Below, piece after piece: positions 36,423 to 40,850 of a stretch of DNA of 64,000 nucleotides. The translations under genes and the position numbers were made by a program. The stretch comes from Chara braunii. Lineage: Eukaryota; Plantae; Charophyceae. The notes beneath the pieces are model-generated. The model was not told where the DNA came from, searched no databases, and worked only from the letters and a program-made list of their open reading frames with translations. Each line of letters opens with the position of its first letter. Within the stretch, counting starts at the first letter, position 1. The stretch is from contig BFEA01000005.1 of assembly GCA_003427395.1 (NCBI GenBank), positions 4,123,953 to 4,187,952 on the forward strand, given 5' to 3'.

Positions 36423-39400
36423 TGTCGGGCTTTTATCAAAGAGATCCAGGCATAGCGATCGAGTGGCGGCGACGTGGGGATGTCAGAGTAGAGCGAAGGT
36501 ATCCAGAAGTTGAGGGTCCGACGGGGCTATCCCCCTTGGTTTTTCGATCGGCGACGTCAAAACGGTGTTAGCGTTTTCTTTTTCCTCGTTCGATATGTTC
36601 TGACGATTAAAAGTTTCTAAATATGTTTATTATTTACTGTCATAGTATTATTTATTTATCTTTGCTCTGGCGTCCCTTTAACCTGGACGCAACGCCGGAT
36701 TTAGTGCCCGTAACGGGAGTCGAGGACCTTAAGCACGCGTCTTGTTTGACCAGTCGTGGTTCAGATGAAATTTGTCTACCCCGCATCTTTTTAAATACGA
36801 AACCGAGGAGTTCAACGAGCATGTGGGCCGATGGGCGTGTTGACCTACGACGCAGGGTAGAACCTTAGCGGCAGGGACCTCAGCGGGGGTCCCGTCTGCC
36901 GACCGCTGATTGTCGCAAAGAAGTTTGAAGGGGTATGTCTGTCGGTGCCAGCGGGGGTATGTAGAGGCCAAGGGCATAGTGGGGAGGTGTGCAGCCATGC
37001 CGAGTGCCCAGCTGGCCTGTGGAACTCCCTTTACCTCGGTTTTCAAAGTTCTCATTTGAATATTTGCTGCTACCACCAACATCTACACCGAGACCCGACC
37101 ATCCTTGGCCCACGCCGCTGGCTTAGCGGCAAGCCCGTGCCCTCCTGCTTACTAAGGGGGCGGAGGCAAGAAGACCGAGCATAAGGGGGGGGAGGGTGCT
37201 GCAGCATCTTCCTATCTGTTTCAGCCACGTATGTGCTCGTGCCGCTTGGGCTGGCACACAAGTGGGTACCAACAGAGTATAGGGGCTACAGACTACTCGA
37301 ACGAGCTTTGTTATCTAATTCATTCGGGAATTCTCCTTGGGCAAGAGAGCAATCAGGCAGGCCATTATGCCTGGTGTTGTCGGACCAAAGGGAGTAAGGA
37401 CGAGCGGAGTAGACCAGAGACTGGACACAGTGAAGGTTAGGGAACGTAGTGACACAGCGAAAGCGCAGGGAGCGAAAGGTACCAGGCCAGAGGACGTTGT
37501 GAGGGAGGGTGTTGTCGCGCGCGACAGTCCCTCGCCCTGATGGGGAGCGCTGAACCTCACGATCGTGTCACGCAGGATGCTTTTGTTTGAAAAGAATCAG
37601 TCACCACTCCGACCGTGCGCGCGCGCTATACTTCTCACGACTCCCTGCGACAGATCAGGATGTCGCGAGGTACACCTCTACCCCAGGGGCTATCACCACC
37701 CTTAGGTAGGCGTATCCCTGCTGAGCTACCGGCCTATATGCCAAGGCTTTTACATGCCTTTGTAGAGGTAGGTCGACCGATGGCGTTTTCTCGATCGCTG
37801 TAGCACAAAACGGGGTACGTGCGGTAAGACGCCTAGAACTGACCCGTCAGATATTCAGGTCGAACTCTTAGAAGACCGTCTATTTCCGCTTCTACTTCCA
37901 AAATATATTATTCTTCTAACCACTGCAATCAAAGCTCCAATCAAACCTTCCTACTACCAAGGACATTCTATTATACTCAACATATGACTGATCATCAGAT
38001 GGTATAGAAGTTATATAGGACTGAATATAAGTATGGAGGTATTACCGTTGGGAACCCTTCCCACTTTCACAAGTGCAATGTGTCCAAGACTCTTCAACAG
38101 ATCAGGTTCAGTTCAATCCAAACCCACGACGAAAACAGACCCGCACAGAATAATGCAAAGACAATCCATACGCCATGCACTAACGACGTCAACCATCAAT
38201 CCACACCTCATACATTGTCCCTCACTTCCCAAACCATGTATGACAGCTCTATCTTTTCTGAGACGTAAGCCCAACCCCCTCACATTTCTTCAAAGGACCC
38301 TTGAGAGTGACTAGGACGATTTAGGCAATGACTACAGGCAACAGCTTTAATGACCACAGGGTTTGACTTTAGATGTGGGTATGAAGTCAAGGGGGAAAAG
38401 TTGAATCGGCAACGACCGACCTGTTATCGAGAGATAACAGAAATTTGAGTCCTCTTTGTAGGACTTCTCATTCAATTGCAACAGATCAAAACAGGGACCT
38501 GCACACACACAGGTCAACAAAGATTCAACAACCCCACTCGATTTCCCACATATTGATATGTAATGGTCAAGCCCTTAGATTTGGTCCATGAGCTTTGGGA
38601 TCAACATCCCAAAGTCTAACCTCTTTAGCTTCTACCTACCCTAAGTTATTTGTCACTACTCCTCTTTTTTTTTGTTCAAGGAATCTTTTGCCTATGTTTT
38701 AAGTTGTCGTAGGGAACTCATATTTCCCCTTACTCTCAGTTCTTGAAGTTTTTCTCTTGCGGATAAGCACACTCTTTGGTGCTTACGAGGTAGTCTAGCT
38801 GAGATTAACTCATACCAGTGGCGGTTTCTCCCTTAAAAGTTTATTAATGAACTAAGTCTACGCGGGGATTCTTCTTTTCTAATTCTTTGTCTCCGCGGTA
38901 TTACCTCTTACTCTGATTCTTTTTAGGACCTTTGGAGTCGCTCCCGCTGGAGCATTCCTTTTTCCTTTCTCTTCTTCTTGTCCTGACACACGCAAGTAGT
39001 AGGTTGATTCACCCGGAAATCTTCCACTGCTTGATCAATTCCAGAAAAATCGGTTAGTCAGAGGAGTGGTCGAGTAGCCCCACGGGAGCACTCAACCACT
39101 CTTCGAAGTCCATACAGTCATTATGCAATCAACTATTTCAAACAATCTTATACAGGCGACTGGAGCATCCTTTTATTAGTTAAGCAGGTAGTTAGGAGGT
39201 CCTGGTCGAACCATCTCAACACTTGACCCAACATTCAGAAAAACACTCCAGATCCAGGTGTTAGTACGAAATTCAAGTTAGTAATAGGTGGTCTTCACGG
39301 GAACCTCATATTACTCCTTGATTAAACCCCAGCCTATCCTCAAAAGGTGTAATAGGATGACCCCACGGAAGTCACCCTACTACTTCCTCAGAGTCATACG

Positions 39401-40850
39401 AGCTAGGATTAAGTTAGTGGATTCAGGCAAACACCAGACCCTCCTTTCGTAGGAGTATCTTTGTCTGGCTTGTTAGGATGACCCCACGGGAGCCTCCTAT
39501 ATCCTGGCTTAATGTTGAATAGACAGATCGTTACCATCCATCAGTCATATCCAAACAAGTAGTAGGGTTACTCACCCGGGAGTATCCCTCTACTATCCAA
39601 ACACAATCACCTCATTTCCTTTCCCCTGTTAGTTGATCCCCATATCAAACAAGTATTAGGATAACCCTCCCAGGAGTTGTTCTACTACCAGTCCGATGCG
39701 TAGGAGATCAGTCAAACAACTCTTGGCTGAGTCGTCCTGACCGTTCATCTACCTTAACTATGCGTCGTAAATGAGCAAAAGGTATGCCGACTCCTATAGG
39801 AAGTCGGACAGACCGTCCCAGACTTTGGGAGTTCGTGTACTCACACGGTGAGTACTTTTCCAAGTGTGGTCAGATCATCGATAGGAGAGCCCCACGGGAG
39901 TCTCCTACTACCTTTGCTTCTATTAGCTAGTAGAGACATGTACCACACGGGAGTACCGGATTACCCCCTAGATCTAACCTATAAGGTAATAAGAAAACTG
40001 CACGGCAGCCTCCCGTCACCAACGCCGAAATCAAACAAACATTTCATCAATTTGTTACTTTAGTCAGATGAGTGGCAGGGTAACTTCACACGGCGAGTAC
40101 CCCATCATCTAGCTTAGTTAGCTCATGCAAGCAGTGTAATGACCCCACGGGAGCCTCCATCACACAACTTCGTCTCTCAAACCCAAGCAAACTAGGTTCC
40201 TTCTTGGTTTTCCTAAATTCCTTTCTAACTTCAGGCAAGGTTCTTACTTCAATCATACGTTCATTCACCTCTTCTGAAAGTTTTACTCCTGAAGAAAAAC
40301 AAGAAAGTGTATAGCACTCAATCCTTCATGCAGTTTGATAGAGAGTCGTAGCTAGTAATGGATACGGGAAAGGATAAAGTAATGCGTACCTGATGGTTCC
40401 CTGCCTCCAGAGTTCCTCCTGAACTCCGGCAGAGCTCCCGCAATCGCCCTGTTGCGTCTGTCCGTTTGATCATAATTTTCCATAGAGTAGACTTTCAATT
40501 CAGAAAAATCATACCACTTCAGATAGTTGTGGAAATATAGGGAAATGAGGGGGTTAGAATACGGGAGAATGGGGAAGGATGGAGGAGGTAGGCACCGTCA
40601 CACGGTGACGATGTCTCTCTCCTCTCCAGAGCCCTGTACTTCTCCGTATCTGACTTTCCCCATTACCTTCAAACAACGATAATTATTCTTGATCATATTC
40701 CTGGATAGATAGGGAAAACAAAGAATGAAGGGATTATATCAGGGAGAGAACAGAGGAGAATGGGAGAGGTATATACCATCACATGGTGACGATGCTTGAC
40801 ACCTCTCCATAGCTTCATATTTTCTAACCTGTGAGTTCTAATAGTAGCAA
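36423..40850. mobile_element. Probable non-autonomous or truncated LTR-element fragment containing the hairpin array
   Basis: Starts TGTCGGG; 37515-37672 is homologous to 62788-63045; no gag/pol motifs; possible - strand intron 40389-40290. Confidence 0.45.
38993..40810. other. Array of ~15 stem-loops with conserved C-ACG-G apex
   Basis: See finding; the stems differ in sequence but retain pairing. Confidence 0.8.

What the first reader, a model, noticed from the sequence alone, without database searches (positions are those of the whole stretch)
38993..40810. Array of ~15 hairpins with variable stems but a conserved C-ACG-G (minus strand C-CGU-G) apex
Seen: hairpins at ~38993, 39061, 39280, 39349, 39474, 39559, 39653, 39837, 39882, 39940, 39985, 40066, 40134, 40581 and 40760. 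Examples: GAGTGGTCGAGT-AGCCCCACGGGAGC-ACTCAACCACTC; GTACTCAC-ACG-GTGAGTAC; CTGC-ACG-GCAG; CGTCAC-ACG-GTGACG; TAGGAGA-GCCCCACGGGAG-TCTCCTA. Four copies have variant loops (CCG, CCA, ATG). Stem sequence changes while pairing and loop persist, which suggests selection on structure. Several + strand A-C mismatches (39349, 39985) become G-U pairs on the - strand, weakly favouring - strand RNA. Known: IRE (CAGUG) and HBV epsilon (CUGUG) use C-NGU-G pseudo-triloops. Inference: a multivalent protein-binding RNA array, e.g. a Gag packaging, export or decoy scaffold in a non-autonomous retroelement.
Basis: partly seen in the sequence, partly recalled or inferred. Interest (0 to 1): 0.82.

Follow-up and report, generated by a model that had tools for sequence, protein, structure and literature searches.

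The report
Fixed-loop hairpin array in algal repeat
A 1.8-kb non-coding stretch, apparently from the stonewort alga Chara braunii, holds 15 small hairpins that keep the same five-letter tip while their stems differ yet still pair, which suggests a selected row of docking sites for a protein; its partner, its expression and the mobile element it belongs to are untested.

Summary
All 15 hairpins are at the stated places and in one orientation. The tip (C-CGU-G read on the minus strand) is 88% identical between units. The stems are about 40% identical and the flanks 27%, which is random level. The pentamer sits at a triloop tip in 9 of 11 cases inside the array and 1 of 58 elsewhere in the window. 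The units fold better than shuffles (mean z -2.3). The inner helix pairs covary. It is not a simple tandem repeat: TRF finds none and the spacers do not align.

The minus strand is only modestly favoured: 38 G.U-type against 21 G.T-type mismatches, but z-scores are similar on both strands.

No LTR pair, PBS or gag/pol gene can be tied to the array. It lies outside the neighbouring giant ParB/MTase/Ulp1 transposon, which ends sharply at about 34,005. It sits in a non-coding repeat that is interrupted here by about 34 kb.

The best reading is a multivalent protein-binding hairpin platform on the RNA of a mobile repeat; this is inferred, not shown.

This scan has already noted arrays with the same apex on other DNA of this genome (s1-535427, s1-569589).

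The parts
38992..40806 (-). Whole array: 15 hairpin units, all in one orientation, spaced 49-455 nt apart, with spacers that do not align
40762..40806 (-). Unit 1 (first on the minus strand). Apex C-CAU-G, a CpG-decay variant. 8-bp apical helix inside a longer GGAGAGG/CCUCUCC stem. z = -4.2
40581..40625 (-). Unit 2. Apex C-CGU-G with a 9-bp apical helix. Paralogue of unit 1 (112 nt, 70% identity). z = -4.0
40126..40170 (-). Unit 3. CUCC-CGU-GGGG apex, 5 bp + internal loop + 8 bp. 4 G.U pairs on the minus strand
40069..40114 (-). Unit 4. UCGC-CGU-GUGA apex. Weakest model score (19 bits)
39981..40025 (-). Unit 5. CUGC-CGU-GCAG apex. 10-bp helix with 4 G.U pairs, which is only 4 bp on the + strand
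39926..39970 (-). Unit 6. CUCC-CGU-GUGG apex with the second pair broken. The hairpin is not the MFE fold
39873..39917 (-). Unit 7. CUCC-CGU-GGGG apex, 4 bp + bulged C + 8 bp
39824..39869 (-). Unit 8. GUACUCAC-CGU-GUGAGUAC, a perfect 8-bp helix
39649..39694 (-). Unit 9. Variant apex C-UGG-G. Folds better on the + strand
39555..39599 (-). Unit 10. Variant apex C-CGG-G. Outer GUAGUAGGG stem intact
39465..39509 (-). Unit 11. GGCUCC-CGU-GGGGUC, then a bulged A, then 5 bp. Best model score (34 bits)
39344..39389 (-). Unit 12. 16 consecutive pairs including 4 G.U, with a CGU triloop. MFE is -24.7 kcal/mol on the minus strand against -13.0 on the plus strand
39276..39320 (-). Unit 13. UUCC-CGU-GAAG apex, partly degraded. 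z = -3.4
39061..39105 (-). Unit 14. 17-19 bp hairpin with a CGU triloop. z = -6.0; about as good on the + strand (z = -5.9)
38992..39036 (-). Unit 15 (last). Variant apex C-CGG-G, apical helix degraded
37511..38442 (.). Flank of the array that is collinear with Chara locus L003 24210-25736. It is the right-hand part of a non-coding repeat ('X') that is interrupted in this window
1892..3142 (.). Left-hand part of the same repeat X. In L003 it lies 47 nt from the right-hand part; here it is 34.4 kb away

Best explanation
The array is a row of about 15 stem-loops in the non-coding part of a dispersed, probably mobile, repeat of Chara braunii. Each unit shows the same apical triloop, C-CGU-G on the minus-strand transcript, on a stem of 8 to 19 pairs whose sequence is free to change as long as it pairs.

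The most likely function is a multivalent docking platform. A protein that recognises the loop and its closing pair binds many times along one RNA and so marks that RNA for selection. For a retroelement this would mean packaging, multimerisation, export or protection by its own Gag-like protein.

What is shown: the hairpins, the conserved apex, the compensated stems, the single orientation, and the position outside the neighbouring DNA transposon.

What is inferred: that the folded strand is RNA, that it is the minus strand, that a protein binds it, and that the host repeat is a retroelement.

The copy in this window looks like a fossil: 5 of the 15 tips are damaged, two of them by CpG-type changes.
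For: Apex against stem conservation: 88% against about 40%, with flanks at 27%.

Covariation in the inner helix:
- Pair 21-27: CG 4, AU 3, GC 1.
- Pair 20-28: UG 9, CG 4, UA 2, never unpaired.
- Pair 19-29: CG 8, UA 5.
- Covariation score 0.342 against 0.231 +/- 0.029 in shuffles (0 of 500 reach it) and at most 0.243 when the partners are slid.

At least eight unrelated outer-stem sequences each remain self-complementary.

The pentamer is at a hairpin tip in 9 of 11 cases in the array and 1 of 58 elsewhere. Fold z-scores are -2.26 against -0.31.

Strand:
- 40 G.U pairs in minus-strand folds against 11 in plus-strand folds.
- A strand-symmetric arm alignment gives 38 against 21 (p = 0.036).
- A U.G at the third pair is kept in 9 of 15 units.

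The apex CpG is kept in 13 of 15 units although the array is CpG-poor (o/e 0.59).

There is no ORF above 71 aa, no tRNA and no Rfam family.

Lead, not proof: the scan's notes report arrays with the same apex elsewhere in this genome, and other Chara repeat families with other fixed loops.
Against: - There is no RNA evidence at all.
- After composition-preserving shuffles the two strands fold about equally well (mean z -2.25 against -1.93).
- The G.U excess loses significance once the C/A richness of the + strand is allowed for (my estimate p is about 0.14).
- No second copy was obtained, so all covariation is between units of one array, and these are paralogues.
- No LTR, PBS or gag/pol gene is linked to the array.
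- No candidate binding protein is identified.
Confidence: 0.4

Rival explanations
1. It is a DNA-level element: a cluster of short palindromic sites on double-stranded DNA, or cruciforms. These would be bound by a dimeric protein as enhancer or insulator sites, or as the subterminal binding sites of a DNA transposase.
For: - Each unit is a palindrome, so it folds about equally well on both strands after shuffling controls.
- Arrays of short palindromes are typical of the subterminal regions of large DNA transposons (established knowledge for CACTA, Mutator and hAT elements).
- Such a giant element, with palindrome clusters, lies in the same window.
Against: - The arms, which would be the half-sites, are not conserved (about 40% identity). 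Only the asymmetric central 5 bp are. A sequence-specific dimer would need conserved half-sites.
- The neighbouring giant element ends at about 34,005 in five independent copies (this window and four other Chara loci), 5 kb short of the array. None of the four related loci has this unit.
- There is an excess of G.U-compatible mismatches on one strand.
Confidence: 0.2
2. It is a neutral by-product: an old tandem duplication of a palindromic unit. The arms would be kept complementary by a mutational process (replication template switching or quasi-palindrome correction), not by selection.
For: - The units are paralogues, with shared GUAGUAGG-type stems and shared short flanks.
- One third of the tips are degraded.
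- Template switching is documented to create and maintain hairpins without selection (PMC8794818, found).
Against: - The process does not explain why the 5-nt tip is 88% conserved while the arms are at 40% and the spacers are random.
- It does not explain why the CpG in the tip survives in 13 of 15 units in a CpG-depleted stretch.
- It does not explain the conserved U.G wobble.
- The spacing is irregular and the spacers cannot be aligned.
Confidence: 0.17
3. It is a source of small RNAs or a double-stranded RNA decoy: the hairpins are processed by Dicer-like enzymes, or they soak up dsRNA-binding proteins.
For: The hairpins are dense and stable on one transcript. Weak sub-threshold resemblance to miRNA precursor models (E about 1).
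Against: - The stems are 8-19 bp with a 3-nt loop, shorter than Dicer substrates (established knowledge).
- Conservation is in the loop, not in a would-be mature strand.
- The Rfam scores of 14-15 bits are far below the gathering scores of 82-84.
Confidence: 0.06
4. They are single-stranded DNA hairpins used in replication or transposition, as in rolling-circle or hairpin-recognising transposons.
For: A conserved asymmetric loop on variable stems is how HUH/Y1 enzymes recognise their sites (established knowledge for IS200/IS605, REP elements and Helitron ends). G.T wobbles are also tolerated in DNA.
Against: No Rep/HUH or Y1 gene was found among the window ORFs that were scanned. Fifteen internal copies in tandem, rather than terminal ones, do not fit. 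No element ends are defined.
Confidence: 0.04

Closest known systems
Dispersed packaging signals of ssRNA viruses and HBV pgRNA (packaging-signal-mediated assembly; PMC6281560, PMC5699041, PMC7612645)
   Same: Many stem-loops on one RNA share a short loop motif while the stems are degenerate. Function would come from multivalent, cooperative binding of one protein.
   Different: In viruses the signals are spread over a whole coding genome and the partner is known. Here 15 units are packed into 1.8 kb of non-coding DNA of an alga, the loop is a strict C-CGU-G triloop, and neither a capsid protein, binding nor even transcription is shown.
C-NGU-G (pseudo-)triloop protein sites: IRE (C-AGU-G), HBV epsilon apical loop (C-UGU-G), Roquin CDE (C-UGU-G, pyrimidine-purine-pyrimidine triloop). 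From my own knowledge, not checked in papers here.
   Same: A three-base N-G-U loop closed by a C-G pair. In most units the 5' arm next to the loop is pyrimidine-rich and the 3' arm purine-rich, as in the CDE.
   Different: There is no C-bulge and no sixth loop base as in the IRE, and no priming bulge as in epsilon. The UUC/GAA upper stem of the CDE is absent. There are no Rfam hits. ROQ-domain proteins are, to my knowledge, a metazoan family.
Tandem repeats in the non-coding regions (LTR, leader, 3' UTR) of plant LTR retrotransposons. From my own knowledge.
   Same: A repeated non-coding module inside a mobile repeat of a streptophyte.
   Different: Those are ordinary tandem repeats with alignable units. 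Here only the hairpin core is conserved, the spacing runs from 49 to 455 nt and TRF finds nothing. An LTR context could not be shown in this window.
Other hairpin arrays of this genome noted by this scan (s1-535427, s1-569589, s1-529341, s1-535434, s1-529347 and others)
   Same: Same genome and same layout. Two of them have the same CCG(U/G)(G/A) / CUCCCGUG apex.
   Different: Those notes place the arrays in retrotransposon LTRs or leaders. Here no LTR could be defined and the host repeat is split by a 34-kb insertion. They are AI notes and I could not re-examine their DNA.

Membership tests
Iron-responsive element (IRE) | CAGUGN hexaloop with a C-bulge five pairs below it; matches the Rfam IRE models | tested here: not met
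   The loop is CGU closed by C-G with no sixth base and no fixed C-bulge. No Rfam hit at gathering score or at E <= 5.
HBV epsilon | A lower stem, a 6-nt priming bulge, an upper stem and a CUGUGC apical loop; matches the Rfam model | tested here: not met
   No bulge of that kind and no Rfam hit.
Roquin constitutive decay element (CDE) | A pyrimidine-purine-pyrimidine triloop closed by C-G | tested here: met
   C-CGU-G in 10 of 15 units.
Roquin constitutive decay element (CDE) | A UUC/GAA upper stem, and a ROQ-domain protein in the host | tested here: not met
   The upper stems are CUCC/GGGG, UCAC/GUGA or CUGC/GCAG. The host protein was not searched for.
Packaging-signal arrays (multiple stem-loops with a shared loop motif) | Several stem-loops on one molecule with a common loop motif and degenerate stems | tested here: met
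Packaging-signal arrays (multiple stem-loops with a shared loop motif) | The RNA is encapsidated and the loop motif binds the cognate coat or Gag protein | not testable with these tools
LTR or leader of an LTR retrotransposon | A second copy as a direct repeat flanking gag/pol, with an adjacent PBS or PPT | tested here: not met
   The window holds no direct repeat of 36.4-50.7 kb. PBS-like matches are at chance level. The RT and protease fragments lie more than 14 kb away and are on opposite strands from each other. A very long LTR whose partner lies outside the window is not excluded.
Simple tandem repeat / satellite | Head-to-tail units with a fixed period that align over their whole length | tested here: not met
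   TRF finds nothing in 38,993-40,810 at score 30. Self-BLAST aligns only the hairpin cores, apart from the last two units.
Subterminal palindrome arrays of the neighbouring ParB/MTase/Ulp1 giant transposon | Lies inside that element and recurs in its other copies | tested here: not met
   Homology to four other copies stops at window position about 34,005, with unrelated flanks beyond it. The unit model has no hit in L001-L006.
miRNA / hairpin small-RNA precursor | A stem of at least about 21 bp, a conserved mature arm and a variable loop | tested here: not met
   The stems are 8-19 bp and the loop, not the arm, is conserved. Rfam miRNA scores are 14-15 bits against gathering scores of 82-84.
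5S-rRNA-derived repeat (Cassandra-like) | Matches the 5S rRNA model | tested here: not met
   A resemblance recalled from memory was not borne out. There is no 5S hit even when a single unit is searched at E <= 10.

The most novel reading that the evidence does not exclude
Families of mobile repeats in Chara each carry their own hairpin 'barcode': a row of stem-loops with a family-specific loop (here C-CGU-G) read by a cognate protein. This would be a natural counterpart of MS2- or PP7-type tagging arrays, letting an element's proteins pick out their own RNA among many competing families in a repeat-rich genome.
Probability: 0.2. Interest if true: 0.85.

Novelty: new variant of a known kind. 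Interest (0 to 1): 0.55.

Why it matters
If the hairpins are protein docking sites on an element's RNA, this would be a compact, natural multivalent RNA tag in a close algal relative of land plants. It would be a way into how retroelements or other repeats recognise their own RNA, and a possible source of new orthogonal RNA-protein pairs for tagging. In two full-text searches of the paper library I found no description of such fixed-loop arrays in streptophyte repeats. If the array is only a mutational by-product, it is a clear natural example of palindromes maintained without function. This copy adds a specific point: the array can occur away from any recognisable LTR or gag/pol gene.

Tried and rejected
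There is therefore no depth, strand or copy-number evidence.

2. Other genomic copies, by four routes, all without result:
- A word search with an ORF that lies inside the array gave nothing.
- Exact look-ups of 10 nearby ORFs gave nothing.
- Two exact gene look-ups gave nothing.
- A 20-mer of the unit in the metagenome contigs gave nothing.

3. 'The array belongs to the ParB/MTase/Ulp1 cassette': rejected. That element ends at about 34,005 in five copies (this window and four other loci) and its relatives lack the unit.

4. The 324-aa minus-strand ORF downstream of the array (34354-35328) has no relatives in the word search and no Pfam family.

5. LTR pair, PBS: none found. Two purine-rich tracts on the minus strand (about 41,105-41,000 and 38,985-38,960) look PPT-like, but such tracts are common in this region, so I gave them no weight.

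6. A 5S-rRNA origin for the unit, recalled from memory: no Rfam support.

7. Raw energies favour the minus strand (sum -267 against -228 kcal/mol), but this is largely base composition, because the z-scores are similar.

8. RNAalifold on the ungapped alignment recovers only the 4 apical pairs, because the bulges sit at different places in different units.

9. Complex prediction, structure prediction and the atlas search were not used. No candidate partner protein could be named.
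Full report
**What is there**

The stretch 38,992-40,806 is non-coding.
- No ORF exceeds 71 aa.
- There is no tRNA and no Rfam family, either at gathering score or at E <= 5.

Every unit has the same polarity: the apex reads C-ACG-G on the + strand, which is C-CGU-G on the minus strand.

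A covariance model built from the 15 units gives these results:
- It recovers exactly those 15, at 19-34 bits.
- It finds nothing else in the 64-kb window.

**More than chance**

- CACGG occurs 11 times on the + strand of the 1,818-nt array and its complement 0 times. The remaining 62 kb hold 26 and 32.
- Read as CCGUG, the pentamer forms the closing pair and triloop of the MFE hairpin in 9 of 11 cases in the array and 1 of 58 elsewhere.
- Fold z-scores against dinucleotide shuffles average -2.26 in the array and -0.31 elsewhere (Mann-Whitney p = 1.8e-4).
- With the tool's own shuffles, six of the 15 units have z <= -3.4 and a seventh has -2.5 on the minus strand.

**Conserved tip, free stems**

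In an apex-anchored alignment (A1), pairwise identity between units is:
- 88% for the five apex columns,
- 41% for the inner stem,
- 39% for the outer stem,
- 27% for the flanks, which is random level.

The inner helix covaries:
- The closing pair is C-G in 15 of 15 units.
- The next pair is CG 4, AU 3, GC 1.
- The third pair is UG 9, CG 4, UA 2 and is never unpaired.
- The fourth pair is CG 8, UA 5.

The covariation score is 0.342. Shuffles give 0.231 +/- 0.029 (0 of 500 reach the observed value), and sliding the partners gives at most 0.243.

Further out the bulges sit at different places, so a single register fails. Each unit still folds on its own. At least eight unrelated outer-stem sequences are each self-complementary.

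Five units (39014, 39298, 39577, 39671, 39948) have a damaged apical helix. Two variant loops (CCAUG, CCUGG) are what CpG decay would produce. Three CCGGG/CCUGG units are each other's closest paralogues. The copy therefore looks like a fossil of a once better-kept array.

**Not a simple tandem repeat**

TRF reports nothing in the array even at score 30. A sensitive self-BLAST aligns only the hairpin cores. The one exception is the two units at 40,603 and 40,784, which share 112 nt at 70%. Spacing ranges from 49 to 455 nt. The units are nevertheless clearly paralogues that arose by duplication.

**Which strand**

Evidence for the minus strand:
- MFE folds contain 40 G.U pairs on the minus strand and 11 on the plus strand. 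The triloop forms in 9-10 of 15 units on the minus strand and 2 of 15 on the plus strand.
- A strand-symmetric alignment of the arms gives 197 Watson-Crick pairs, 38 mismatches that are G.U on the minus strand, 21 that are G.U on the plus strand, 15 transversion mismatches and 22 bulges (p = 0.036 against 50:50).
- Units 39366, 40003, 40091, 40148 and 40784 are good helices only on the minus strand.

Evidence that weakens this:
- The + strand is A/C-rich here. Allowing for that, the excess is no longer significant (my estimate, p about 0.14).
- z-scores are similar on the two strands (-2.25 against -1.93).

I put the minus strand at roughly 60-65%.

**Organism**

- The only relatives of the window's MTase-like ORF in the word search are three Chara braunii proteins.
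- Four loci fetched through the Ulp1 hits share 66-82% nucleotide identity with the window's giant element; three are from assembly GCA_003427395.1 and one from GCA_003427375.1. L003 also shares an 88% identical small repeat with the window.
- This agrees with the scan's earlier notes that the genome is Chara braunii.

**Context**

(a) The array is not part of the neighbouring ParB/MTase/Ulp1 giant element. Homology to four other copies runs from about 26,290 to about 34,005 and stops at the same terminal sequence in all of them, with unrelated DNA beyond.

(b) The window holds no second copy of any part of 36.4-50.7 kb, apart from a 157-nt palindromic repeat at 37,513-37,669. So there is no LTR pair. 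PBS-like matches are at chance level.

(c) The nearest retroelement pieces are an RT fragment at 54,968-55,489 on the minus strand and a protease fragment at 56,558-56,983 on the plus strand. They are more than 14 kb away and degraded.

(d) Window 1,892-3,142 and 37,511-38,442 are collinear with one continuous stretch of locus L003 (23,260-25,736). There the two parts are 47 nt apart; here they are 34.4 kb apart. The array thus lies about 550 nt beyond the last matched piece of the right-hand part of a non-coding repeat ('X'). In this window that repeat has been split by nested insertions: a retroelement, repeats and the giant transposon.

(e) In L003 the collinear position is followed by a different, regular array. 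It is about 120-nt tandem units with a GCUUCCC-GUA-GGGAAAG hairpin. My model does not recognise it. It may be a relative with another loop, as an earlier scan note suggests for this family, but I cannot show homology.

(f) A very long LTR whose partner lies outside the window remains possible.

**Copy number and expression**

Four low-coverage DNA runs of the species hold 38-46% of the stretch's sampled words in their contigs. This hints at more than one near-identical copy, but it rests on assumptions about coverage. The small RNA-run contigs hold none of the words.

**Mechanism**

The pattern is an invariant asymmetric tip, a conserved closing pair, a conserved U.G wobble two pairs below it, freely compensated stems, one polarity and many copies in a row. 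That is what is expected for repeated binding sites of a loop-reading protein on a single-stranded nucleic acid.

The closest known logic is the multiple degenerate packaging signals of ssRNA viruses and HBV (PMC6281560, PMC5699041, PMC7612645). The tip has the C-NGU-G form also seen in the IRE, HBV epsilon and Roquin CDE loops (my own knowledge). None of those family definitions is met.

I therefore favour a multivalent docking platform on the RNA of a mobile repeat (confidence 0.4). The rivals are:
- a DNA-level cluster of palindromic sites (0.2),
- a neutral palindromic duplication maintained by template switching (0.17; PMC8794818),
- small-RNA or dsRNA roles (0.06),
- single-stranded DNA hairpins of a rolling-circle-type element (0.04).

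**Novelty**

Two full-text searches found no description of such arrays in Chara or in retrotransposon literature. Within this scan it is not new. Arrays with the same CCG(U/G)(G/A) / CUCCCGUG apex were noted on other DNA of this genome (s1-535427, s1-569589), as were several sister arrays with other loops. This copy adds three things:
- a quantified contrast between tip and stem conservation,
- a clean exclusion of the neighbouring giant transposon as host,
- an example lying away from any recognisable LTR or gag/pol gene.

Noticed in passing
window 26,290-34,005; L003 10,763-18,500; L004 39,263-47,381; L005 10,763-19,153; L006 23-2,571: The giant ParB/MTase-like/Ulp1 element has a sharply conserved right terminus in five copies (this window and four other loci), followed by unrelated DNA. 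In the window it ends at about 34,003-34,005. The Josephin/RING-like ORFs at 34,017-35,997 (minus strand) therefore lie outside it. No inverted copy of the terminus was found in the window at up to 3 mismatches.
   Followed up: partly
window 1,892-3,142 and 37,511-38,442; L003 23,260-25,736: Two window segments that lie 34.4 kb apart are contiguous (47 nt apart) and collinear in another Chara locus. This implies a nested insertion complex of about 34 kb in the window, made of a retroelement, 8.6-kb-spaced repeats and the giant transposon.
   Followed up: partly
L003 25,990-26,540: A regular tandem array of about 120-nt units (5-6 units). Most carry a hairpin of the type GGCAC..CUUCCC-GUA-GGGAA..GUGCC or CUCCUUU-UAGA-AAAGGAG. 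It sits at the position collinear with the window's array but has a different loop and is not recognised by the unit model.
   Followed up: partly
window 23,377-23,626: About 10 tandem 26-nt units, each with a 5-bp GUCGG/CCGAC stem and a 6-nt loop. They lie just left of the ParB-like region.
   Followed up: no
window 41,830-45,460 (+ strand): Four to five repeated modules. Each has an (AAT)n microsatellite, then a TTGGCGCT..CCCAGACTAC-like motif, then a short ATG-started exon-like piece ending in ..C-R-x-x-P-x-P-G and a CCAGGTAWGT splice-donor-like site, followed by GT/CT-rich low-complexity sequence. The donor-like decamer occurs 17 times in the window (at up to one mismatch), about 5.7 expected; 10 of the 17 lie in the 91-nt tandem array at 15.3-16.2 kb.
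   Followed up: no
window 62,788-63,050 and 37,513-37,669; also 63,103-63,574 against L003 18,757-19,212: Small palindromic (foldback, MITE-like) repeats are shared between distant places in the window and with another Chara locus at 86-90% identity.
   Followed up: no
window 14,708-16,707 and 19,463-20,070: 91-nt tandem arrays in inverted orientation to each other (87-93% complementary) flank a run of N. Direct repeats of 1.8 kb at 12,396-14,124 and 21,013-22,858 (76-83% identity) are spaced 8.6 kb apart.
   Followed up: no
They were left out of all later searches.
   Followed up: no
window 39,760-39,800 (minus strand): Between units 8 and 9 there is a further near-perfect palindrome, CCGACUUCCUA/UAGGAGUCGG, without the CGU tip.
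   Followed up: no
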